NCBI GenBank assembly: GCA_951406725.2
Contig: OX597819.1
Location: forward strand, 25,192,001-25,254,000
DNA from: Octopus vulgaris
Lineage: Eukaryota
Reading direction: 5' to 3'
DNA: 62,000 bases
Positions 1 through 61,775 of this stretch are shown here, piece after piece. Position 1 is the first letter of the stretch, and each line of letters begins with the position of its first letter. The translations under genes and the position numbers were made by a program. Below the pieces are notes generated by a model. The model saw only the letters and a program-made list of their open reading frames with translations. It was not told the DNA's origin and made no database searches.

Positions 1-257
1 TTCCTAACACTAGCTGAATGATAACTAAGTTATTTTACTAAATACTTTGTTATACTTAAAATAATTGAAAGAAACACAGAGCATCTCAAAATAAATACAG
101 TAACGAAAGGGTTAATTTGTTTCCACTATTCTAGTGTGTTTCTTATTCAATTTTCCTTTTTCTCTTTTATTCTATTCTCTTCTATTTCTTATTCTATATT
201 CTCTGCTTCTATTGCATCTCTTCTCACACCAAGTCTCATCGTTTTCCGTACTTACAG

Positions 258-500
258 CCAAAGTAAAAGTGGTACCATGGAGCGACTGGGTGAAGACGAA
301 TACAACAAGAGGTGGATACTTTGAGCAGCGCTTCCGTTTTTCGTGCAGCGCACCAGTCCCGGATCGTCACATGATCCGAGCAAAGCACATGAAAAGCCAA
401 GTGCGTTTCTGCTTAAACAATGGAGTGTGTCACAACTCAGGTGAGCTTCGCAATCCTGTCGACATATACACGCCCGTAGATCGAGTCCTTCGCAAGTACT
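258..500 (+). CDS. Sema5: Semaphorin-5-like internal exon encoding the atypical TSP1 repeat (PWSDWVKTNTTRGGYFEQRFRFSC...RFC); donor either after 440 or after 500
   Basis: Pyrimidine tract plus cttacag acceptor ending at 257. Peptide matches the class-5 semaphorin motif PWxxW..N.T.GG..EQRFRF.C. Two phase-1 donors: CAG|gtgagc (440/441) and ACT|gtaagt (500/501). Confidence 0.85.
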
Positions 501-3500
501 GTAAGTTCAAAAGGAAACTATTCCGTAAATACTGCAACTGCCGGACACTTGGAGTCTTTCTAGTGTGTCAGAAATGTTCATAGTAGAAGTAGTAGTGGTA
601 CACCTAGCGGTATAAGTGGAGGAAATATAAATACAGACACATAACATGCAAACAACAACAAACAAACAAACAAACAAAAAGAAAATAAGTAACAAACAAA
701 TATATATTAATGTGATTGTGAATAACTAAGAAATTTTACATGTATACACCCACCTACATACATGCATACACACCATGCACACACATGCAAGTCCTCCTAT
801 ACACTCACCAAGGCGTATACATTGCATTACATGTGTAAAGTGTATGGCTTGGTTTGTTATATAAATATAATTATATATACCCATGTATATATTTCTAAGA
901 TATAATATGTCTATAAGTAACATATATATATAACATATTTATATATGTATATGTACATACACTTGTATTATCCATATATTCATATGCGTGTGTGGATATT
1001 TTGTACTATCCATATATTCATATGTGTGTGTGGATATTTTGAATTGAAGGAAAGAGAGATATTGTACTGCATGTAATTTTTTGTGTTTGCATTTTCTTCC
1101 CCACCATATACAATTTTCCCCCTTGACCCACTGGCTCTCCAGTTTTATTACATACTTGTTTGTTCACCTTTCACCACCAACACCAACAACCACCACCACC
1201 ATCGATTTTTACTATGGTTTTTAATATTTACTTCTCCTGTCAATCCTTGAAACCACCTTGACCATTTCCATCATCACTATCACCACCACCACCACCATGA
1301 CCACCACTGTATTTGTCTCATTGCTACAACCACAACCACCAACACTGTCACCTCTTATAAATATCAAAATCAAAGTTAGCTACTTTGTGGGTCTTCTATC
1401 ACTGCTTTAACAAGCATGGGAGACAACTCTGGACATGTTTCTCTTTTGTTATAGGCTCATCAGCAAAGTGTAGCCAATACTGTATTTACGAAAACAATGA
1501 AAACAATATTGTTTTATTTTCTCACTGTATAATTATTTCTGGTTAACATATTTAGTGTTCTGTACATTAGATATATTAACACACTATTTTAACTGCTGTT
1601 ATTTTTCATATGGAGGCATACCTGAATTATTTATTCTCTAGACAATTATAGATGCCTTTGACATGTATCTCTACTCTTGCAACCCCAATACCCAATGTAG
1701 ACATCATAATTAAATGAAAAAAGAATAATGTAAAGGACAAAAATAAATCCAAGGATGATCAAATTTGTTTGAAAATGAAGAAAGTTGAAAAGGGGCAAAC
1801 AGTTGCATGATGGGAAGAAGTAGTGAGTAAATAAAGTATAGATGTAAACAGTAAATTCTGGTTGAATGTTTGGTAGATAGAATGATAGTCATGCGAATAG
1901 TTTTTTTTTTTGTTTTTTGTAAACTGCATGAAGTGCATATATAATAATTTATTGTTGCAATTATACTTTCTATTTTCGTTATTATTCTTGTCATTATTAC
2001 CATCCATTATTTTCATTAACACCACCATCATCAATATCATTATCATTATCTGGATTGGCAGAAATAGTTGAGCACCAGACAAAATACCTTGTATTGGGGT
2101 TCATTTTCTTATCTTGACAAGCTCAATTTTTACCCTTCATCCATCTACAACCAATGAATTTAGTGCTGTTTAAATACCGAAGTTAATTTTATTGGTTGTA
2201 TCTTCTTTTAAAATTTATAATCTTGTGTCCACGTTGAAAATTATTATTATTGAGAGAAGAAGCAACATTATCGTTCATCCTTTTAAAGCTGATAAAATAA
2301 AATACGAGCCACACATTGGGATCAATCTAATTACTATAATCTTCATCTGAATTTGTGGCTGAATATGTGCCCATTATAGAAATTAAAGTACCTGATATTT
2401 GATTTTAAGTGTTGTAATCATTATAGTAAATTACTGGGCAACCCTCTTTGCCTTGCCACAATTTTGTTAAGTCTTGTTAAAAAGGCATCCTCATTACTTG
2501 TATCATTATAAGTATTTGTCAACATTATAACGTGCTATTACTGTTGTCATCATCATTATTATCATTATTAATGATAATTTCATGCCATCTATTTCATACT
2601 TTGATATTATGTATGTATTGTATTTTGGTATGTTTATCACCACCACAACCAGTACCACCATCATCAGCATCATTATGATGGTCCCCGTTTTCCTTGTTAG
2701 TCTACTTTTAGCATGTTCTTATATTGTGTATCTTTCTACAACATAGATTATTTATGTATATACTTACTGTTTGCTGACACAGTTGGTTTTCTACTGCTTC
2801 ACTTTACATTTAAAGTACCTGTTTGGTTTAATTTTATTTAACTTTCAGGATCTAATAAAAAAAATCTGCATTTAGCATATGGATTAGTTTTTCCTTTAAC
2901 TACAATGACAACGAGACTATTAATAACTGTTTCCGATTTAGGTGCAAGGCCAGCAATTTTGAGGCAGGTGGTAGTTAGTCAATTATATCAGCCCCAGTTC
3001 TTGGCTGGTACTTCATTTTATCATTCTCAAAAGGATGAAAGACAAAGTTAACTCTGACAGGATTTCAACTCAGAATGTAAAGAACCAGAACAGATATCAC
3101 TAACTTAATGATAATAATAATAATAATAATAATAATGATGATGATGATAATTCATTATTACTACAAGGGCAACAAATGAAGATACATAATAGGATAGAGT
3201 ATATAAAGTGAAAGGGATAGGATTTACATTGAAATGGAATGAAATGAAAAATTGACTGTATGAAGGGTATAAAATCTGATAATGTCCCTGAGGAGAACCA
3301 TCACTTAGGGCCATTCAAGGAAACCCAGAGATCCAGGATTACCTTGACTATTAAGGGTAAGTGTGCTCTCCAATCTGTACTCCCTGGCATACAGATGCAT
3401 GCTGAATGTAGGTTGAGTACAGCTACAACCATAATAATAATATTAATAATATTAATAATAATGGTAATGATATTAATAATTATTCCTAATATAGGTACAA

Positions 3501-5255: not shown

Positions 5256-5984
5256 ATTATAATCATCATCTTGTTATAGATGTCATTGCCATCAACATCT
5301 CTATCATCACCTTTACCATTGTGGTCATCATGTTTATCAAATAGTTGTCATGGATGTGCTTGTAGTGGTAGCACTAATAATTCAAGGATTTGAAATGGAT
5401 TATCTTCATTATGAGTTTTGTATTAATTGTTATTGAGATTAAAACCATTCTTACTATGTCAGGAAATTAACTCGACTATGCCAGTCCATATAAAAATATA
5501 AATCCATTATATCTATGTTACAGTTAGTCATTATTGAAAGGAGTAATAAAATAATAAGTTTATTGTTGACCCTTTTGGAATTGATTAATTAAAATACCAG
5601 CCAAATACTGACATCACATACATGTCCCTCCAAAATTTCAATCTTTGTTGTTGTTGTTGTTGTTTTTATTATTATTTCTCTGTCTTTACGTTCTAAGTTC
5701 AAATTCTGCTGAAGTCGACTTTGCTTTCATCGTTTTAGAGTTGATGTAAAAGTACCAGTTGAGCACTGGAGTTGATATAATCAAATAGTGCCCCACCCCC
5801 ATCCCCAATTCAGGCCTTGTGCCTATAGCATAAAAGATTATTATTATTATTATTATTATTATTTGATGAAAACTCTCAGTTTATTTTGTTGGGTACGGTA
5901 GAAAGTGTAAGCTGTCTACAGCCAACAGACTAAGGTAACACTTGTTTACTGGTCATGCTTCAAGAATCTTGAGAATTATTGCTA

Positions 5985-6051
<67 letters not shown>

Positions 6052-7416
6052 GCTGGTGAGCTGGCTACATAGTTAGCATGTTGGAAAAAATGCTCTACTT
6101 ATACTTCTTCCAGCTCTTTACATTCTGAGTTCAAATCCTGGGAAGGTTAACTTTACCTTTCATCCCTCAAAGGTTGATAGCATAAGTACCAGTCAAGTGC
6201 TGGAGTCACTGTAATCAACTCTCCCCCCCACCTCTCAAAATTGCTGGCCTTGTTTAAAAAACTAGAAAAAATTATTATCTGTCATCATGATCACTATGTG
6301 AATCACCATTATTATTACTACTTCCTCAGTTTAGTCAGTTCTCAAAGTGATAAATACCTGGCCTCCTTTAAAATATCAATGAAATTTGTCTTTAGTCTCA
6401 CTTAAAACTTTTTATTAAGCAGAAGACAAATGTGCTTTACATCCATATAATTCTTCTTTGTTTGCTACAATGAGGACAAATTTAACCTCAGAAATGGTTT
6501 TAAGCTTGAAAAGTTTTTAAGTCATCTTAGTTTTATTAAACAGGCATAAGTGTGGTTGTGTGGTAAAAAGTTTGCTTCACAACCACATGGTTTTGAGCTC
6601 AGTCTCACTGTGTGGCACCTGGGGCAAGTATCTTCTACTATAGCCCTGGATCAACCAAATCCTTGTGAGTAGATTTGGTTGACAGAAACAGAAAGAAGCC
6701 TATTGTATATATAACCCATGCCAGCATGGAAGGCGGACATAAAACAATGATGATGATATGTATACATCTAAATGTGTGTGTTTGTGTTTCTCCTGCACCA
6801 CCACTACAACTGGTGTTTGTTTGTTGACACCCTTCTAATTTAATGTTTCAGAAAAAAAGAAATCAATAGAATAAGTACCAGGCTCAGAAAAAAGAAAAAA
6901 AACAAAGCCTAGGGGCAATTTTTTCAACGAAACCCTTCGAGGTAGTGCCCTAGCATGGCCACAGTCCAGTGACTGAAACTAGTAAAGTATAATAGAGAAA
7001 AAAATGGCAATTTGTGTATGCCATTTGCAAAATGCTACAGCCACCCTCACGCTCATCTCCTATGAGAAACAATGTACATAGTTATTACTGACTAACCCTA
7101 CCCACACATAGGTCATTATAAATAGCATGGCTTGATTACTCTGTATATTTAATGGGTTAAATTGTATTGGTTACTGTGTATTATTGTGTAACTATCTTGT
7201 GAATCCGGATGTAGCTCTATTGCAACAAGTCTTAGTTATTTAATGTGGAAGCTATGATAGGAAAAAAGACTGGAATAGTTACTGTTAGTTACATTTGATA
7301 ACTAGTTAATTACTCGGTGAACTTTACTTTTAAAGCAGTATATTCTTTCATAAGACATTGCCATTGGACTTCAACAATATGACATAACTATAGATAGGTC
7401 TCTTAATTATATGACA

Positions 7417-7823
7417 TACTCTTTACTCTCTTTTACTTGTTTCAGTCATTTTGACTGCGGCCATGCTGGAGCACCGCCTTTTAGTCGAGCAAATCGACCC
7501 CGGGACTTATTCTTTGTAAGCCCAGTGCTTATTCTATCGGTTTCTTTTGCCGAACCGCTAAGTGACGGGGACGTAAACACACCAGCATCGGTTGTCAAAC
7601 ACAGACACACAAACACACACACACATATACACACACATATATATATATATACATATATACGACAGGCTTCTTTCAGTTTCTGTCTACCAAATCCACTCAC
7701 AAGGTATTGGTTGGCCCGGGGCTATAGCAGAAGACACTTGCCCAAGATGCCACGCAGTGGGACTGAATCCGGAACCATGTGGTTGGTTAGCAAGCTACTT
7801 ACCACACAGCCACTCCTGCGCCT
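7417..7823 (-). mobile_element. SINE family B (head ggagtggctgtgtggtaag, internal (TA)n(TG)n, tail aaagagt repeats)
   Basis: Full-length reverse copy. Other copies at ~6541-6990 (+), 25456-25785 (+), 30628-31021 (-), 39414-39735 (+, partial) and 45231-45645 (+). Confidence 0.85.
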
Positions 7824-29900: not shown

Positions 29901-32589
29901 CCAGGTATTTGAGCACAAGTGCCCTTCAAGGCTGCTACATAACCCGCACACAGAGCACAAACCGAACAGCTAATTTACTACACAAATCCTTTAAAATTAT
30001 AGTTGCATATAATTAATTACTACACGAAGGGCATTGCACTACTTCTTGTAATATGCTATTTTAATTTTTCTTTAATGACTTAATCAGGGGAGGAAGATGG
30101 ATGCCCTTGACTCTTTGCAGGGGCCCCAAAGCTGATGGTTGGAGTGAAGAGAGAAAGTCATCTCCAGATTTGAGACCGTGACCAAATACATGTAAGAGTA
30201 AACTCTGCTAAGAGTACCTAATAACAAACCCTGGCAATGATTTAAGTCTACCAGTAAAAAGCAAATATAGACCAATTGAATTTCAAGCAGCTTCTATCTC
30301 ATAAATTCCACTCACAACTTACGGCTTTGGTAGAAGACCCTTGACCAAGTTGCTACAGAGTGGGATAGAACCTGAAACCATGACGTCTCAAAACAGACTT
30401 CACAAACACCTGACCATACCTATTTCTTTATTACCCACAAGGGGCTAAACACAGAGGGGAACAAACACCTGACCATACCTTTGCACGTGCACACACATAC
30501 ATGCATGCATGCACACATACATGCGTCCCCCCACACACACACACATACAGAGAAGATCCTCTTGTCTTAGATGACAGATGAGAGATCCCTAATTTCTTGA
30601 TGACCAACCTGCTCAGGTGATTTTTTTTTTCTTTTTACTTGTTTCAGTCATTTGACTGTGGCCATGCTGGAGCACCGCCTTTAGTCGAGCAAATCGACCC
30701 CGGGACTTATTCTTTGTAAGCCCAGTACTTATTCTATCGGCCTCTTTTGCCAAACCGCTAAGTGACGGGGACCTAAACACACCAGCATCGGTTGTCAAGC
30801 AATGCTAGAGGGACAAACACAGACACACAAACACATACACACACATATATATATACATATATACGATAGGCTTCTTTCAGTTTCCGTCTACCAAATCCAC
30901 TCACAAGGCTTTGGTCGGCCCAGGGTTATAGCAGAAGACACTTGCCCAAGATGCCATGCAGTGGGACTGAACCCAAAACCATGTGGTTGGTTAGCAAGCT
31001 ACTTACCACACAGCCACTCTTGCGATTTGTTAATAGTGATCAAATGTTTGTGCTGTTCATTAGCTCAATCGCTCTCTCATATTGACATTGTCTGTACAGT
31101 TAAACAGTGTGCTTCATGTCAGATGTTGAAGTGATTGCAGAGTAGCATGAAATGAGCCATTTTGCTCAAGGACACCACCTAATAGCCTTAAACAGGGAAT
31201 CTAATGAGCATCAAAGACAGTTGGTGCACTCCTGGCAGTCAGCTATCATAGGGTAGACAAACCCTTCTCAATTCAGTTCAGGCGAGACGAATTTGGATGT
31301 GTGAAATTTAAACAAAGAGTAAAGATGATGGTGTATAGAATATACACATTTAATACTTCTTATTCCAACACATTATAAAGATCTTATAATTTCTAGTCCA
31401 GCCCTAGACTGCTCTCATGCAAGAAATAGCAGCCAGATTTTCCCCAAAGCATACATTATCATCTTAAAGAAGAACGGACACCACCTGGTCTGAGAATTGA
31501 AACCACAATCTTGTGATGATCATGAGTGTGACATCCTAATCACTGAGACCATGGACCTTCACTATATGTGTGTGTGTGTATTCAATAGGATAAGGTTCAG
31601 CTACATTGGTGTTTAGATTATTGGCTGTGAAATAACAGATGATATAGCATGGACTAAATATTTAGCAATACATTCCAAATCAAAATCTTGTATACTGGAT
31701 GGGCAACTTTGCCTTTTATCCATATTTTAACACTAAAATCAATACCAGTTACATACTGCTGTTAATTCAGATAGCTATAGCCCCAGAAAATGTGCTTACA
31801 GAAGACAGGATCATGGAAAATTGAAGTAAGAGTGAATGTGAAATCTGGTTTTGTTGAATATATTTCTACAGAGAAGTGGCTTTTGAGTTATAGAAATAAA
31901 ACTGGTGTATACTAAAATCAATGCAGACAGCCTCTTAAAAGAAACAAGCATGAATATCTACCAAATCCCTTAAGACTGCATGAATTGAAAGTCTTTGATT
32001 TACTATGTGTGATGTGGTGTGACTTTATAACAGTTTGAATCCACTATGTGTTTATAAGTATAAATATACTTATATATGAATATACCAACACACAAACACA
32101 CACACACACACACATACACACACACACACATGCATGCATGCATACACATACTGACTTATACATATGTAGATTCATAATATAGCAATAAATATGTTTTGTG
32201 AATTACAGAGAAGAAATTCAATATCTGTTGTTGGAATAAGTGTTTTGTCAGGACTGCCATAACAGTGACACAAATAGTATATAAATGCCACAAAATACAT
32301 GAATAATTTATTTCTCATTAATTTCCATCCACCCCAGCCTACTTTTAACCGGACATATCACAGACCTCCCCCCCCCCCGCAAAAAAAAAACAATGAGCAT
32401 TATTTGAATGATTTGTGTTATCCAATATCTTTTCTAAACAAAGCATTGTTGCGTAGAGAAGTTAAAGGAGGAAAACACGTGCATCCAAATCTTATGGGTT
32501 TTTTTTAAAGATGGGTTAGACTTCTTTAAATAAATAGGAAGCACATTTAACAATAGATAATAATGGTTTTTCACATAAACCCAAGGATC

Positions 32590-33140
32590 TGAAATTTATT
32601 GCCGGTGGCACGTAAAAACCACCATCCGATCATGGCCGTTTGCCAGCCTCGCCTGGCCTCCGTGCCGGTGGCACGTAAAAAGCACCATCCGACCACGGCC
32701 GTTTGCCAGCCTCGCCTGGCCTCCATGCCGGTGGCACATAAAAAGCACCATCCGATCGTGGCCGTTTGCCAGCCTCGCCTGGCCTCCGTGCCGGTGGCAC
32801 GTAAAAAGCACCATCCGACCGTGGCCGTTTGCCAGCCTCGCCTGGCCTCTGTGCTGGTGGCACGTAAAAAGCACCATCCGACCGTAGCCATTTGCCAGCC
32901 TCGCCTGGCCTCCCTGCCGGTGGCACGTAAAAAGCACTATCCGACCACGGCCGTTTGCCAGCCTCGCCTGGCCTCTGTGCTGGTGGCACGTAAAAAGCAC
33001 CCGCTACACTCATGGTGTGGTTGGCATTAGGAAGAGCATCCAACCGTAGAAACATTGCCAGATCAGACTGGAGCCTGGTGCAGCCTTCTGGCTTCCCAGA
33101 CCCCAGTTGAAACGATGATGATGATGATGATGATGTATGA
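32590..33140 (+). mobile_element. 3' end of an abundant retroelement with (GAT)n tail; minus-strand relatives at ~20905-21095, ~24498-24670 and ~41500-41775
   Basis: Shared ggcattaggaagagcatcc..gccagatcagactgg..ccccagttgaa followed by gatgatgat; the other copies start with (CAT)n. Confidence 0.7.
32601..33000. repeat. 63-bp tandem repeat, ~6.3 units
   Basis: gccggtggcacgtaaaaagcaccatccgacc.. recurs at 32601, 32664, 32727 and so on; the period of 63 explains the repetitive ORFs in the track. Confidence 0.95.
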
Positions 33141-33602
33141 TGAGGTTATGGGATATTTATGCCTCAACCAAGAACATTGTAGGTATGTTTTATTGACATA
33201 ACTAAAAAATAGCAGTGAGCTGAAAGAATTGTTGCCATGTTGGACAAGATGCTTAATAGCAGTTCTTCCAGCTTTACACTCTGAGTTCAAATTCTACCAA
33301 AGTTGATTTGCTTTTCATCTTTTCTGGGTTGATAAAATAAGTACCAGTTAAACATTGGGGTTGATGTAATAAACTATTCCCCTCCTCCAAAATTCCAGCT
33401 TTTGTGCCTGTAGTAACTAATTTATAATCAAAGTCAGTTCTTAGATTAAGCAACCAATAAATAATCGCTGCTCCATAGGACTTGAAGAATTAACCTTGCT
33501 TAATGTTTGTAGCTTGAATTTGTTACAAAATTTGAATGGTCTGGTCTATATTTTAGGGATAGAAATCCAATGTTGTGGAGTTCATGTTATGTATGCATGT
33601 TC

Positions 33603-38965: not shown

Positions 38966-41022
38966 CCAGTCTAATAATCTGAAACATGATTGTAAGTTCC
39001 TGAGTGCAACACCCTTATCTCTAGGCCATGCACCTTAACTCTTTGACAGCACCCCAGAAAAAAAGAAAAAATCTTTTTCAGCACCTGAGCACTGTATATA
39101 ATAATTTTATTATTATAGTATTAAGATAAGCTATTTTTAAGTCTCAGTCAGAGAGAGGGTTACACTGTTGACCCCTACTGCAAGGTGTCTGAGGTTAATG
39201 GGAGCAAAATGGCAGATAAACCACAATTAATGGCTTATTCTCAAACTAGAGACCTGCTCTGAATGCTTATAGCAGAGTAGTCTCTGCTAAAGTCACACAT
39301 GGTCAGATGGTGGTGTTCAGCTAGGTGTTTGCTGATGATTTCAAAACAGAATGAAATGATATACATAACTACCTATTACTAATAGAAAAAAGAAAACTAT
39401 TCAGAAAAACTGCTATAGCCCTGGGCCAACCAATGCCTTGTGAGTGGATTTGGTAGACTGAAACTGAAAGAAGCCTGTCGTATATATGTATATATATATA
39501 AGTGTGTGTGTATATGTTTGTGTGTCTGTATTTGTCCCCCTAGCATTGCTTGACAACCGATGCTGGTGTGTTTACGTCCCCGTCACTTAGCAGTTCGGCA
39601 AAAGAGGCCGATAGAATAAGTACTGGGCTTACAAAGAATAAGTCCCAGGGTCGATTTGCTCAACTAAAGGCGGTGCTCCAGCATGGCCGCAGTCAAATGA
39701 CTGAAACAAGTAAAAGAGTAAAAGAGTAAAGAGAGTAGATATGTATATTCTGTGCATCTTCCTTGTTCCATTTAGATTTAGGATTTGAACTCCTCACTCT
39801 GTCATGATTTATCATTCATCAACAAGTGATTATCTCCCTTAAAGTAACTGCCACCCAGGTACCACATGTTCAAAAGACTCAAGTGTTTTCAGAATAATGA
39901 AATGCATTTCAGAAACATTTTTGAATTCATTATAAAAAAAATCAAATAGACAATGATAATAATTCAAGATATATAATATGTAAATATACTTTTAGCTTAT
40001 ATTATATCATTTTGCGATAGACCTGAGTAAGTCTTTTCCAGTTTTGGATAAATTCTTAGCAAGGTTAATCCCTTGCAGATGGATTTAGTACTGACAGTTT
40101 GTGCTGTGTACTGGTATTAGATGTACAGTAACTACATAATTTTTCATATAAAGAACTTTACAGTGTTTTCACAAATACTTCTCAGTGTGGTATATTTGAA
40201 AAACCACAGTGCCACACAGAACAGGACATCACACTGCTCTCACACAGTGTCTTGATGTGGTCGATACCACTCCCCGTCTGCAAAGAGCCTACAAGAAAAT
40301 GAGTTAGTTTTATGTTATGAATTTTTAAAGCAGCGGTGAGGGGCACCCCTCATCCAATTCAAACTTGAAACCTTTGATACTCTTTGCTAATGGTGTCTTT
40401 AATAAATGATAAAAACAAACAAACAAATGATTTGTATCTTAATACCAAAACAGTTATTTAATACACATCACATATTTATGAATTTGTAACATTAAAAATA
40501 CATTATTTCTTTTAGTGCAGATGTCCTCTCCATGGTTTCTTAACTTACATTTCACTCTTGGTTCTACAAACGTTCCCTACCCTTGATTTAATGAAAGTGA
40601 GAGCAGTGAAGTATCACAAGCAGTTGAGCTCTGATCACATATATGTGACTAGTGATATTTAGTTACGTTCCTCAATGTACTGAGTTCAAATTATGTCAGG
40701 GTCAGTTATGTTGTTTATCCCATATATCAAGATGATTTCAAATGACTTATCCTTTGAAAGGCTGTGACCCAAAATCCATAAACTAGATGATAGTGTATAG
40801 ATCCAATGATTTTATAAGCTGTTGATGGAAAACTAAATGAAAGGGAACTATAACTGAACTAATATATACATACATATATATATAAATCTTTAGGTAAATA
40901 TATTCAATAAGAATATTATATACTGAGTGCTCCATTGTATAAAAATATTAATACTATTAAAGTATTTATATATTTAATACCAGCGATATATACATATATT
41001 TTTTTATAATATATTATCATTA

Positions 41023-41458
41023 ATAAAGAAAACCAATATCCAAACACATCATAACGATATACCCCCGTGAAAGAAATTCTTGTATTAAAAATATAAATAT
41101 AATGTATAAAATAAATTTGATAATTTAAAAATTTTGAATCAATTATTTAAGCATCTTACGATCGTTTCGCAGAAGAGTTGTCCCTATAATGAAATCCTAT
41201 ATTGATAAGCATTTATAGACAACCCGTCTGCTCTTCAGAGATATAAAATATGAATATTGTATAATACATCGAATAATAATCTTAAAAAAAAATTGAAGTA
41301 AAATTGTAAAATGGTGTTTGTTTGAAATGTAAAATCTTATTTATTTTATACATTATATTTATATTTTTATATTTATTTATTTATATATATTTTTAATAGA
41401 ATAATTTCTTTCACACGGGTATATCGTTATAATGAGTTTGGATATTGATTTTCTTTAT
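41023..41458. mobile_element. ~57-bp inverted repeats (41023-41078 and 41403-41458) enclosing the hammerhead motif; probable Penelope-like relic
   Basis: aaagaaaaccaatatccaaac..ataacgatataccc..gtgaaagaaatt is reverse-complemented at 41403-41458. Confidence 0.6.
41152..41243 (-). ncRNA. Type I hammerhead ribozyme motif (Penelope-like element type), structurally intact
   Basis: Minus strand reads TATCT-CTGAAGA-GCAGA..long hairpin..TCTGC-GAAA-CGATCG-TA-AGATG. Full core, G10.1-C11.1 pair, palindromic helix III ACGAUCGU, GUA cleavage triplet, 5-bp helix I. Confidence 0.8.
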
Positions 41459-41839
41459 CATTAATAATAATAATAATATATTATTAAAATATATATCATT
41501 ATCATCATCATCATCATCGTTTAGCGTCCGCTTTCCATGCTAGCATGGGTTGGACGGTTCAACTGGGGTCTGGGAAGCCAGGAGGCTGCACCAGGCCAGT
41601 CAGATCTGGCAATGTTTCTACGGCTGGATGCCCTTCCTAACGCCAACCACTCCGTGAGTGTAGTGAGTGCATTTTACGTGCCACCGGCACAGGTGCCAGG
41701 CGAGGCTGGCAACGGCCACGAACGGATGGTGCTTTTTATGTGCCACCGGCATGAGGCCAGTTGGGGCGGCGCTGGGTATGTATATGTATCTGTATATATG
41801 TATATATATACATATATATATATAGATATATATATATAC

Positions 41840-51546: not shown

Positions 51547-52690
51547 TAGCTGGTGTACCTGGTAATTCCTGGGGGTAAAGATGTTCTATTGAAATGCTTT
51601 ATAACTCTAAGAAAGCAATTTCATTATAACTTCCACAAAAGGTGTATTTTCCATCATGAAAAAAATATTAAAAAAACTGTCAGCTGGAGGAGGGAGAGAT
51701 TGCTGGAGGTTGGCAACTCTCATGCCATTGCATAATTTTAGGGGATCGAGGTTTCTTAAAAGCATAACTGGGGCTCCAACCTTTAGATGCAATTCATGCA
51801 GTGGTAGACCTGAAGGTGCAAGGCTATTGAAGAATTCAACGGGGTAATGAACAGCATCATTGGTGTGGAGTACAATATCAATTGACATGTATGTGCGACG
51901 ATTGTCAAGCAGTTGTTCCAGAAGGTGATTGTTTATGCCATCGACTGCAACATTTTTTGGCACCAAAATTGCAGTTTTCTCAGTTTTCTCAGCCAACAGT
52001 GGTCTGTGAATTGTGTGTTCAGATTGGGGAAAACTCTCACCAATAGTTCGTGTATATTTGACACCAAATTGCCAAAGGGTAAACTAATCTTCCCCTTCTG
52101 CTCAATAATTACAGAACCAGTTCCAATATCCATTAATTGCCTGCAGAAGTTCTGCATGTGTGCATCACCACCTAACTGCACTCTCATGTTTGTTGTGAGT
52201 TTCAACTTTCTAACCTTGCCCCAAAGGTATGAAGATTTGAGGCTCACACTTACCTCATCTGCTCTCGTCCCCTTTCGAATGACTGTGAGTGTTTGTCGAA
52301 AGTCTCCTGCAAGGAGTACTGTTAGGCCACCAATTAGTCTTGAGTTGCACCTCGGATCTTGAAGTAATCTGTCAAAAGCCCCCTTATGACTCATTGTTGC
52401 TTCATCCCAAATGATCAATTTGCACTCAGTGGATGACTTTGAGATCAGGCAGCTCATCCATCCTCCCCTGAGCGCATTTCAAGCTATTCACATAGGTATG
52501 AGTTGAATGAAGCATTGTCTGTAATTTTTGCAATCAGACGTTTGTCAACACCTTCATTCAGCCTGCACCATTGGTCAACTTCCTCATCGTCACCTCCCAT
52601 AAAATACACCTGGACAAATTTCAGCTCAGCATCTGGTAAAGCTCTTAGGCTTCCCACTTAATTATAGCATTGACACCTGATTTTGATATC
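51546..52690 (-). mobile_element. Internally deleted Helitron with pseudogenised Rep N-region and PIF1 helicase fragments
   Basis: Minus-strand peptides VGSLRALPDAELKFVQVYFMG, LIIWDEATM, VLLAGDFRQ, LTTNMRV and LHLKVGAPVMLLRNLDP..LCNG. The 3' end is a hairpin-like CCCAGG..CCAGG followed by CTAG|T at 51546. Confidence 0.9.
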
Positions 52691-61153: not shown

Positions 61154-61377
61154 TATATTTATATATTTACATACATCAGGCTTCCGTCTCCTAAATCCAC
61201 TCACATGGCCTTGGTTGGCCTAAGCTGTAATAAAAGATTCTAGCCGATGGTGTCACGCAGTAGGATTGAACTGTGAACCATGTGGTTTGGGAGGCAAACA
61301 TTTTACCACACAACCACGCCTGTGCCTCAGTTTGGTTAATTATTTTTCATCCTGTCTTATTTTTATCTTTTTACCAG

Positions 61378-61775
61378 AATATGACACCAGTTATGTAACG
61401 AGCAGCCACTACCCATCCTTCGCACTGATCCACCTAATTGCCGTGGCTGTAATAGGTTTCACTATAGGAGCTCTATTGACCGGCACCATACTGCATCATA
61501 TCCACAAGTGCCAGACCAGTCGAAAAGTGCGCATTACCAAACAAAAGAACGAAAAAGCCCAATGTAATATCAATCACGCGCCTTTCACATTATCATCATC
61601 ATCGTTGTCACAAGCCAGTCTCGTCTATCTGAACAATGCCCCATCATGTCAACCCATAATGCTCCCGCCGCCGCCACCAATCTCCAATAATATCAATGAG
61701 CTGAACATCAATGAGTTTTCAACGCTGAAGAGAAACTGTGACCTGAGGACTAATTTGGCACTGAATGACCTTTGA
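61378..61775 (+). CDS. Sema5: Semaphorin-5-like terminal coding exon: transmembrane helix (FALIHLIAVAVIGFTIGALLTG) and cytoplasmic tail with a polyproline stretch, ending in TGA
   Basis: Acceptor ttttaccag ends at 61377, in phase with the previous exon. HLIAV..GALLT resembles the Sema5 TM segment and STLKRN resembles the invertebrate Sema5 tail. Stop at 61773-61775. Confidence 0.88.

What the first reader, a model, noticed from the sequence alone, without database searches (positions are those of the whole stretch)
41023..41458. Intact type I hammerhead ribozyme, antisense to Sema5, boxed in by inverted repeats
Seen on the minus strand at 41243->41152: helix I TATCT/AGATG, core CUGAAGA, helix II GCAGA/UCUGC extended by GGGUUGUC/GACAACUC into a long hairpin, GAAA, self-complementary helix III ACGAUCGU, and cleavage triplet GUA (cut between 41157 and 41156). 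Known: Penelope-like elements and metazoan retrozymes carry type I hammerheads with palindromic helix III that cleave as dimers. Here the motif lies inside ~57-bp inverted repeats with no RT ORF. Inference: a small non-autonomous ribozyme-bearing element, possibly an undescribed cephalopod retrozyme or PLE derivative.
Basis: partly seen in the sequence, partly recalled or inferred. Interest (0 to 1): 0.85.

Follow-up and report, generated by a model that had tools for sequence, protein, structure and literature searches.

The report
Hammerhead ribozyme in truncated Penelope retroelement
The sequence is a genuine, complete hammerhead-ribozyme motif, but it sits in the tail of a dead, front-truncated copy of a Penelope-like retrotransposon (Hydra clade) present in hundreds of copies in this octopus-like genome, so it is an ordinary relic and not a new kind of element.

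Summary
The type I hammerhead motif is on the minus strand at 41243->41152, exactly as described. All core nucleotides are present and the predicted cut lies between 41157 and 41156. A descriptor scan finds only this site in the window and none in 20 Mb of composition-matched random sequence. It is not a private element. The same 120 nt recur at 95-100% identity in at least 41 places (690 first-look candidates). Copies share a 3' end, are truncated at variable 5' points, and often lie beside (TA)n. Longer copies run upstream into a GIY-YIG endonuclease and a telomerase-like reverse transcriptase carrying the marks of Hydra-clade Penelope-like elements (DKT, CxCX5C linker, no CCHH). One locus has the classic repeat(HHR)-ORF-repeat(HHR) partial tandem. 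The "boxing" inverted repeat is a second, inverted, 5'-truncated fragment of the same element joined head-to-head. That is a Penelope-like insertion signature seen in 6 of 29 sampled loci, each with different breakpoints, and it is not a transposon terminal repeat. It is not a retrozyme, because there are no tandem units. Copies decay neutrally. Rfam's hammerhead model misses this motif, probably because helix II is 14 bp with a 35-nt cap. Cleavage, probably as a dimer, is untested. Verdict: a new member of a known kind.

The parts
41152..41243 (-). Type I hammerhead motif. Helix I is 41243-41239 / 41156-41152. CUGAAGA is 41238-41232. Helix II is 41231-41218 / 41182-41169 with a 35-nt cap at 41217-41183. 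GAAA is 41168-41165. Palindromic helix III ACGAUCGU is 41165-41158. H17 is A at 41157. The predicted cut is 41157|41156.
   Evidence: window copy: core intact, helix II 13/14 pairs, helix I 5/5. In cofolding, the dimer adopts the double-hammerhead fold.
40865..41335 (-). Copy A: a 5'-truncated 3'-UTR fragment of a Hydra-clade Penelope-like element. It matches family consensus positions 202-711, includes the hammerhead and the long (~130 nt) 3' tail variant, and ends in (TA)n-like sequence.
   Evidence: blastn to the family 3' consensus; JC distance 0.067 to consensus.
41339..41496 (+). Copy B: an inverted fragment holding only the 3'-terminal 158 nt of the same element (consensus 421-573). It is joined head-to-head to copy A with 3 nt between them.
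   Evidence: 91% to consensus. The repeat finder arm 41353-41469.
41012..41128 (.). The part of copy A that is the inverted-repeat partner of 41353-41469 (117 nt, 79% complementary).

Best explanation
The locus is a dead insertion of a Penelope-like retrotransposon (PLE) of the Hydra clade. [quoted passage not shown] The UTR carries a type I hammerhead about 750 nt after the stop codon and about 290 nt (or ~420 nt in the long-tail variant) before the 3' end. Insertion by target-primed reverse transcription produced a copy truncated at the 5' end (copy A: only the last ~470 nt, hammerhead included). As is often seen for PLEs, it also produced a second, inverted, truncated fragment abutting its 5' end (copy B). 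That explains the 'boxing' inverted repeat and the absence of an RT ORF. The following is inferred, not shown. In active units arranged as partial tandems, the hammerhead in each flanking repeat would cut multimeric transcripts. Helix III is only a self-complementary ACGAUCGU, so it would act as a dimer in which two copies form an 8-bp intermolecular helix III and trans helices I. In the window the motif is still intact but has no partner hammerhead, promoter or ORF. It is most likely a functionless relic in a Sema5-like intron.
For: Repeat family: 41 scored matches at 95-100% identity and 690 first-look candidates. The copies have a common 3' end and a continuum of 5' truncation points. First-look candidate counts fall going 5': 690 for the HHR, 234 for 300-550 nt upstream, 44 for the ORF end. 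A (TA)>=4 run lies within 50 nt of the 3' end in 15 of 29 loci. An inverted fragment of the same family abuts the 5' end in 6 of 29 loci, with different breakpoints each time. Coding link: longer copies continue into an ORF reading NCTCKNIKLCPL..NVIYKC..(E)YIGSS..FKQR..H..CRLCxKE..CRH. This is 37% identical (E 4e-26) to the C-terminus of an intact 806-aa ORF, P0001. At C2:153.04 Mb, RT pieces are colinear with P0001 aa 90-444, including FDITMGSSDSAQ and YRDDAL (46-52% identity, E 4e-21 to 3e-38). There they lie between two direct ~1.4-1.85-kb repeats, each with the hammerhead, 4850 nt apart. P0001 and 22 homologues show RWK, DKT, CxCX5C, no Cys pair between GIY and YIG, CxxC-E and CxH. These are exactly the Hydra-clade marks in PMC8557442 section 11. 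An AlphaFold model of the Argonauta homologue (pLDDT 86) matches telomerase RTs best (3du5, E 2.9e-9). Ribozyme: the core is complete and chance is excluded. The dimer MFE is the double hammerhead (-65.8 versus 2 x -27.9 kcal/mol for the consensus; -57.4 versus 2 x -25.7 for the window copy). Across 27 distinct hammerheads from three or more families in this genome, 89% of cells pair (20-42% when slid), and 8 of 13 pairs change on both sides. A second family with the same ACGAUCGU helix III and a long helix II insert passes Rfam's threshold (35.6 bits).
Against: Rfam's Hammerhead_1 model gives no hit on the window copy, even at E<=10. The monomer MFE is not the hammerhead fold. The continuous 14-bp helix II leaves no loop at the usual position for the loop-loop contact of fast natural hammerheads, so activity may be low. 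Within the family there is no covariation, and no lower substitution rate in the core (0.014) than in the loop (0.013). That is as expected for neutral copies, but it gives no support either. Pfam GIY-YIG reaches only 15.2 bits on this family's EN. Pfam and PDB sequence searches do not recognise the RT. No intact ORF of this exact family was seen: the closest copies have frames of 284 aa or less. The youngest subfamily was followed only into the last ~50 nt of the ORF. Self-cleavage was not tested.
Confidence: 0.85

Rival explanations
1. The recently amplified subfamily to which the window copy belongs is a non-autonomous, ORF-less derivative (a 3'-UTR-only, SINE-like parasite) carrying the hammerhead, mobilised in trans by Hydra-clade PLE proteins. 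It would not be made of truncated copies of an autonomous master.
For: Sampled 3'-UTR copies are young (JC 0.02-0.076, median 0.041). ORF-bearing copies of the family are all broken, with frames of 284 aa or less, and belong to more diverged subfamilies; L037 is 73-76% identical to the window copy. Intact Hydra-type ORFs of other families exist and could supply protein (806 aa).
Against: 5' ends form a continuum rather than a fixed start. A young-subfamily copy (L033) runs into the last ~50 nt of the ORF. The sample is biased towards copies most like the window.
Confidence: 0.15
2. A metazoan non-LTR retrozyme: short tandem units, each with a hammerhead, transcribed, self-cleaved and circularised into 170-400-nt circRNAs.
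For: It has a type I hammerhead with a weak palindromic helix III and is AT-rich, and PLEs and retrozymes coexist in animals (PMC7229834).
Against: No head-to-tail tandem of hammerhead units appears among the 41 mapped copies. The only close pair is inverted. In 29 loci the motif is single. The only direct pair is 4850 nt apart and flanks an RT-EN ORF. The family is contiguous with a PLE ORF.
Confidence: 0.03
3. A MITE or other DNA transposon whose terminal inverted repeats box in a captured ribozyme.
For: There is a 117-158-nt inverted repeat around the motif in the window.
Against: 23 of 29 loci have no inverted partner. Where one is present, the arms and breakpoints differ. The left arm is a copy of the element's own 3' end. 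No family-wide TIR or TSD exists.
Confidence: 0.01
4. The motif has been co-opted by the host, for example to process an antisense transcript or regulate the Sema5-like gene, like the conserved intronic hammerheads of amniotes.
For: The motif is intact, lies in an intron, and the inverted repeat could form a long dsRNA hairpin.
Against: It is one of hundreds of near-identical copies evolving neutrally. It lies antisense to the gene. It has a helix II mismatch that the consensus lacks. It has no partner hammerhead for dimer formation.
Confidence: 0.02

Closest known systems
Hydra-clade Penelope-like elements (Craig et al. 2021, PMC8557442)
   Same: C-terminal GIY-YIG EN with a CxCX5C linker, no CCHH pair, and CxxC/CxH around the conserved E and N. 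DKT in place of DKG, and an RWK motif. Hammerheads present. Insertions next to (TA)n. 5' truncation, partial tandems and inverted 5'-truncated partners. Reported from Mollusca among other aquatic phyla.
   Different: The unit here is longer than the '<3 kb' quoted (4.85 kb between hammerheads at C2:153.04 Mb, inflated by a ~0.7-kb microsatellite, with a ~1 kb 3' UTR). The hammerhead is not 'canonical': helix II is 14 bp plus a 35-nt cap, and Rfam does not detect it. No intact ORF of this exact family was found.
Minimal/atypical hammerheads of metazoan PLEs (Cervera & de la Pena 2014, PMC4209133)
   Same: Type I topology, G10.1-C11.1, a longer-than-usual helix II, a short helix I (5 bp), a small palindromic helix III implying dimeric action, mostly single motifs from truncated PLEs, and occasional opposite-strand pairs 100-700 bp apart (here L019/L028).
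   Different: Helix II is far longer (14 bp versus 6-8 bp) with a structured cap. There is no unpaired nucleotide between A9 and G10.1. Helix III is a full 8-nt palindrome.
Metazoan non-LTR retrozymes (Cervera & de la Pena 2020, PMC7229834)
   Same: Type I hammerhead, AT-rich non-coding carrier, and weak helix III in some (amphibian) examples.
   Different: Retrozymes are 150-450-bp head-to-tail tandem units giving circRNAs. This family is dispersed, single-motif and contiguous with an RT-EN ORF.
Rfam Hammerhead_1 (RF00163)
   Same: The same conserved core and three-helix junction. Two other hammerhead families in this genome reach or approach its threshold (45.5 and 35.6 bits).
   Different: The window motif does not score at all, even at E<=10.
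Poseidon PAc of Anolis (Frangieh et al. 2024, PMC11167929)
   Same: A PLE with a hammerhead in the flanking repeat. Two alternative 3' ends ('tail'), explained there by two internal RT start sites. The family here also has two 3' ends, about 130 nt apart.
   Different: It belongs to a different clade. PAc's hammerhead overlaps the ORF start and its tail is 30-40 bp. In PAc, hammerhead catalysis was dispensable for insertion in vitro.

Membership tests
Hammerhead ribozyme, type I | Conserved core C3 U4 G5 A6 N7 G8 A9 / G12 A13 A14 / A15.1-U16.1 / H17 not G, with the G10.1-C11.1 pair | tested here: met
   every position is present in the window copy (H17 = A).
Hammerhead ribozyme, type I | Three helices around the core with helix I open and helices II and III closed | tested here: met
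   Helix I is 5 bp, helix II 13/14 bp, helix III a palindrome. The dimer MFE is the double hammerhead. The monomer MFE is a different fold.
Hammerhead ribozyme, type I | Compensatory changes that keep the helices | tested here: met
   Between families in this genome: 89% of cells paired versus 20-42% when slid, and 8 of 13 pairs changed on both sides. Within the family the copies are too alike to tell.
Hammerhead ribozyme, type I | Score at or above Rfam RF00163 gathering threshold (34 bits) | tested here: not met
   No hit at gathering or at E<=10. A likely cause is the 63-nt helix II.
Hammerhead ribozyme, type I | Loop-loop tertiary contact between helices I and II | tested here: inconclusive
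   The continuous 14-bp helix II leaves no loop at the canonical distance. Helix I can extend past a bulged C (sequence reading only).
Hammerhead ribozyme, type I | Site-specific self-cleavage | not testable with these tools
   Needs in vitro transcription or mapping of RNA ends.
Penelope-like element, Hydra clade | Telomerase-like reverse transcriptase with DKT and RWK motifs | tested here: met
   RT pieces upstream of the hammerhead in L061 and L085 are 41-57% identical to P0001. P0001 and its homologues carry DKT and RWK. The model matches TERT best. The N-terminal motifs were not recovered in this family's own copies. The RT is absent from the window copy because of truncation.
Penelope-like element, Hydra clade | C-terminal GIY-YIG EN with CxCX5C linker, no CCHH, and CxxC/CxH around E and N | tested here: met
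   The motifs were read in L084, L085 and L086, and the region aligns to P0001. Pfam GIY-YIG is below its cut-off (15.2 bits).
Penelope-like element, Hydra clade | Partial tandem giving direct flanking repeats (pLTRs) that carry the hammerhead | tested here: met
   L061: direct repeats 1302-2682 / 5639-7492, with hammerheads at 1585-1607 and 6435-6457, flanking the RT-EN remnants.
Penelope-like element, Hydra clade | Frequent 5' truncation and an inverted 5'-truncated copy at the 5' end | tested here: met
   (6 of 29 loci, including the window); L085.
Penelope-like element, Hydra clade | Insertion into (TA)n | tested here: inconclusive
   15 of 29 loci have (TA)>=4 within 50 nt of the 3' end. 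However, the genome is AT-rich, the element's own end is TA-like, and no control was run.
Metazoan non-LTR retrozyme | Head-to-tail tandem units of 150-450 bp, each with a hammerhead | tested here: not met
   single dispersed motifs.
MITE / TIR DNA transposon | The same terminal inverted repeats and target-site duplication in all copies | tested here: not met
   the inverted arm is absent from 23 of 29 loci and variable in the rest.

The most novel reading that the evidence does not exclude
The long, conserved helix II extension would define a distinct structural subclass of PLE hammerheads. On this reading the extension is a functional module, for example an RT/EN-binding or dimerisation platform. 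The motif would then serve RNP assembly or template recognition as well as, or instead of, cleavage. The young 3'-UTR-only copies would be a ribozyme-bearing non-autonomous parasite of Hydra PLEs.
Probability: 0.12. Interest if true: 0.55.

Novelty: new member of a known kind. Interest (0 to 1): 0.3.

Why it matters
It adds a cephalopod family to the Hydra clade of Penelope-like elements. It also shows that this clade's hammerheads can carry a very long helix II that curated covariance models miss, so Rfam-based counts of hammerheads in invertebrate genomes are underestimates. For annotating this genome, it explains a recurrent intronic inverted-repeat structure as a retroelement insertion signature rather than a new mobile-element type. 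It does not open a new question. Whether PLE hammerheads cleave in vivo, and why they are kept, remains unresolved in the literature (PMC4209133, PMC11167929), and this family is one more substrate for that test.

Tried and rejected
- Rfam cmscan of the window at gathering threshold, and at E<=10 on 901 nt and on 131 nt, gave no hammerhead hit.
- Pfam on ORFs near long copies gave only LINE zf-RVT fragments, which are nested unrelated insertions in L084, and nothing for the PLE ORFs. The precomputed families on homologues (PF26215, PF28514) are not in the local Pfam copy.
- PDB sequence searches, single-sequence and profile, gave only I-TevI at E 0.58, and nothing, respectively.
- The very abundant 781-aa PLE family found with PF01541 does not carry this hammerhead in its 3' region (L083).
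- The intact 806-aa Hydra-type element (L087) shows no recognisable hammerhead in 1.1 kb after its stop codon, either by Rfam or by eye.
- The flanks of the two other hammerhead families (L064, L073) hold no EN/RT ORF within 1.5 kb.
- An apparent 5' end at 'AAGAACTGCTCG' proved to be one copy's truncation point; about 20 copies continue upstream.
- No supplementary files of PMC8557442 are held, so I could not check whether an octopus Hydra family is already listed there.

Full report
OBSERVATION. On the minus strand the window reads UAUCU | CUGAAGA | GCAGACGGGUUGUC - 35-nt cap - GACAACUCUUCUGC | GAAA | CGAUCG | U A | AGAUG, from 41243 to 41152. My descriptor requires the core, G10.1-C11.1, helix II of at least 4 bp, a palindromic helix III and helix I of at least 4 bp. 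It found this site and no other in either strand of the window. It found no site in 20 Mb of Markov-1 sequence with the window's composition, so chance is excluded. The inverted repeat is real but longer than stated: 41012-41128 versus 41353-41469, 117 nt at 79%. The gene context is as stated: window 116-580 (+) encodes a SEMA5B-like TSP1 domain (E 1e-22). One part of the proposed check fails. Rfam's covariance models report no hammerhead here at gathering threshold or at E<=10, even when only 131 nt are searched.

IT IS A HIGH-COPY REPEAT. The window is G000:C6:25192001-25254000 in a 2.8-Gb assembly. The 121 nt around the motif recur at 95-100% identity in 41 scored places, from 690 first-look candidates. 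In 29 independent loci the copies share a 3' end about 290 nt after the start of the motif. Eight of them, including the window copy, instead end about 130 nt further on. The copies start at a continuum of 5' positions. About half lie next to a (TA)n run. First-look candidate counts fall towards the 5' side: 690 for the motif, 234 for 300-550 nt upstream, and 44 for the ORF end. This pattern indicates target-primed reverse transcription with 5' truncation, not cut-and-paste transposition.

WHAT THE INVERTED REPEAT IS. Against a consensus of the family's last 712 nt, the window holds two pieces. Copy A runs 41335->40865 on the minus strand (consensus 202-711, with the hammerhead). Copy B runs 41339->41496 on the plus strand (consensus 421-573, only the terminal 158 nt). 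They are joined head-to-head with 3 nt between them. Six of the 29 loci have such an inverted fragment abutting the 5' end of the sense copy, each with different extents. In L019/L028 both arms carry a hammerhead. The other 23 loci have none. So the repeat is a by-product of individual insertions, not a terminal repeat of the element.

THE ELEMENT IS A PENELOPE-LIKE ELEMENT OF THE HYDRA CLADE. Walking upstream through longer copies leads into an ORF that stops about 750 nt before the hammerhead. L084:3088-3873 and L086:1883-2719(-) read ...NC(T/S)CKN(I/K)(K/E)LCPLK.NCRRFNVIYKC.V...(V/E)YI(S/G)SS..FKQR.LAHIHS...SCRLC.KESLY...ST(C/Y)R(H/Y)RF. This is a GIY-YIG nuclease preceded by a CxCX5C motif. 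It has no cysteine pair between GIY and YIG. A CxxC sits before the conserved E and a CxH lies downstream. Searching the genome with this peptide gave 17,307 first-look candidates. Same-family copies (60-88% identity) all have short frames. There are also many 35-45% relatives with long open frames. One relative, L087:687-3107, is an uninterrupted 806-aa ORF (P0001). It contains SDKTGNIY, FIQFDISNYYRSI, FDITMGSSDSAQ, YRDDALFAV, CNCRKPKLC, NVIYKC...FYIGST, CRLCIRE and FCVHKF.

Pieces of this family align colinearly with P0001. In L085 the thumb region aligns at 41% (E 3e-24), the EN aligns, and an inverted N-terminal RT piece aligns at 57% (E 1e-30). In L061 (C2:153041000-153050999, minus strand), aa 90-166, 215-328 (with the motif B and YRDD boxes) and 335-444 align at 46-52% (E 4e-21 to 3e-38). 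These are followed by a microsatellite, the EN, the 3' UTR and the hammerhead. In L061 the whole unit lies between two direct repeats (1302-2682 and 5639-7492). Each repeat carries the hammerhead (1585-1607 and 6435-6457), and the two hammerheads are 4850 nt apart. This is the classic PLE partial tandem: repeat(HHR)-ORF-repeat(HHR).

An alignment of P0001 with 22 database homologues gives the consensus RMRWKA, ADKT, FDIxxFYPSI, FDVTMGSxDGAE, GLYRDDGL, CNCRxKxxCPLxGxC, IVY...YIGxT...R...H, KRCxLCxxEK and SKCRH. The best named homologue is a hypothetical protein of Argonauta hians. These features match the definition of the Hydra clade point by point: an RWK motif, DKG changed to DKT, a CxCX5C linker, CCHH absent, CxxC and CxH on either side of E and N, hammerheads present, (TA)n targets, and occurrence in Mollusca (PMC8557442, section 11). 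An AlphaFold model of the Argonauta homologue (pLDDT 86.4) matches telomerase catalytic subunits best (3du5 E 2.9e-9, then Candida, Tetrahymena and human TERT) ahead of other reverse transcriptases. PLE RTs are the sister group of TERTs, so this is as expected. Sequence libraries were of little help. Pfam GIY-YIG reaches 15-16 bits, and Pfam and PDB do not recognise the RT.

THE RIBOZYME. The family consensus has A where the window has C at 41226, giving 14 uninterrupted helix II pairs. Twelve of the 29 sampled copies keep a fully intact motif, the window copy among them. Substitutions per site per copy are 0.014 in the core, 0.030 in the stems and 0.013 in the cap. Sixteen of the 55 substitutions fall at three CpGs. 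Inserted copies therefore decay neutrally and give no covariation signal of their own. Support for the fold comes from comparison between families. A genome search with RF00163 found two other hammerhead families. One is about 42 nt and canonical (up to 45.5 bits). The other is about 108 nt and reads GUAC|CUGACGA|GACCC...GGGUC|GAAA|CGAUCG|UU|GUAC (35.6 bits, above threshold). That family has the same ACGAUCGU helix III and a long helix II insert, but different helix I and II sequences.

I built a trimmed, core-anchored alignment of 27 distinct motifs. On it, 89% of cells pair (20-42% when the partners are slid), and 8 of 13 pairs change on both sides. Two caveats apply: this reflects only a handful of lineages, and I did the trimming. 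Helix III alone (2 bp plus a GAUC loop) cannot hold a monomer. RNAfold puts the monomer in another fold. RNAcofold puts two copies into the double hammerhead, with an 8-bp intermolecular helix III and trans helices I (-65.8 versus 2 x -27.9 kcal/mol for the consensus; -57.4 versus 2 x -25.7 for the window copy). This matches the dimeric mode proposed for PLE and amphibian hammerheads (PMC4209133, PMC7229834). The continuous 14-bp helix II leaves no loop at the usual place for the loop-loop contact, so low intrinsic activity is likely, as reported for PLE hammerheads in vitro.

MECHANISM: SHOWN AND INFERRED. Shown: the family structure, the link to an RT-EN ORF, the partial tandem, the inverted partners, the intact motif, and the thermodynamic preference for the dimer. 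Inferred from the literature: in active tandem units the hammerheads in successive repeats would trim multimeric transcripts. Reverse transcription would start at internal sites near the genomic 3' end. The two 3' ends seen here resemble the 'tail' dimorphism explained by two RT start sites in Poseidon PAc, where hammerhead catalysis was dispensable for insertion in vitro (PMC11167929). The window copy lacks a promoter, an ORF and a partner hammerhead, and is most likely inert. Its JC distance to the consensus is 0.067. On the calibration published for Octopus vulgaris repeats (JC 0.065 ~ 18 My, PMC13282606) it would be roughly that old, if this genome evolves at a similar rate. The species is not known to me. 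The genome size, roughly 30 large contigs and the Argonauta hit suggest an octopod.

RIVALS. A retrozyme is excluded by the lack of tandem units. A MITE is excluded. Chance is excluded. Host co-option has nothing in its favour beyond intactness. The one open alternative is a sub-variant: the young 3'-UTR copies may come from an ORF-less derivative mobilised in trans. I could not settle this because further genome sequence could not be fetched.

VERDICT. It is a new (cephalopod) member of a described clade, with a hammerhead variant that current covariance models miss.

Noticed in passing
window 116-580 (+) and 61224-61772 (+): The first is an exon-like ORF with a SEMA5B-like TSP1 domain (PF23260, E 1e-22). 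The second is an ORF that reads like a transmembrane segment plus cytoplasmic tail but has no Pfam hit. Together they suggest that most of the window is one large intron of a Sema5-like gene on the plus strand.
   Followed up: partly
window 40985-41142 with 41339-41496: The two inverted arms would form a ~117-158-bp imperfect dsRNA hairpin in the Sema5-like pre-mRNA, whichever strand is transcribed. This is a plausible substrate for the heavy A-to-I editing known in cephalopods. Not tested.
   Followed up: no
window 41497-41775 (element on minus strand): A GC-richer SINE-like repeat ending in (GAT)n abuts copy B. It contains an internal 62-nt duplication (GTGC.TTTTA.GTGCCACCGGCA). Related sequence recurs in many of the fetched loci (L014, L016, L026 and others). 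ARAGORN finds no tRNA-like head in the window.
   Followed up: partly
window 32574-33145: A GC-rich (about 60%) tandem array whose unit of about 60 bp keeps several reading frames open on both strands. It looks related to the 62-nt internal repeat of the SINE-like element.
   Followed up: no
window 51610-52478 (-): Two overlapping ORFs with PIF1 helicase and Pif1 2B domains (E 7.6e-25 and 3.5e-16), most likely a Helitron remnant.
   Followed up: partly
L064, L065, L068, L077 (e.g. G000:C7:15930010-15930117): A second hammerhead family of about 108 nt with the same ACGAUCGU helix III and a branched ~75-nt helix II insert. It scores above Rfam's threshold. It is the ~42-nt canonical family (L067-L081) with an insertion in loop II.
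   Followed up: partly
L087:687-3107 (G000:C5:50456486-50458906): An uninterrupted 806-aa Hydra-type RT-EN ORF ending next to (TA)n. No hammerhead is recognisable in the 1.1 kb after its stop codon, although the clade is reported to carry them universally.
   Followed up: partly
G000, many loci (e.g. C16:20838796-20839059; L083): A different PLE family with many identical 781-aa open frames and at least 5955 GIY-YIG first-look candidates. Its 3' region carries repeated GATTGGTCAAAA..TGATGACGTC units and also ends at (TA)n.
   Followed up: no
family consensus 573-711; window 40865-~40996: About a quarter of copies, and three of the inverted partner fragments, carry a ~130-nt extension beyond the usual 3' end, separated from it by a short (TA)n. 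This is much longer than the 30-40-bp PLE 'tail'. Its origin (a second RT start site, or the element's other end in a tandem) is unresolved.
   Followed up: partly
L084 1-2803 and 6861-7355: LINE fragments with zf-RVT domains sit upstream of, and nested inside, a long copy of the PLE. They briefly suggested a LINE parent for the hammerhead before the insertions were mapped.
   Followed up: yes
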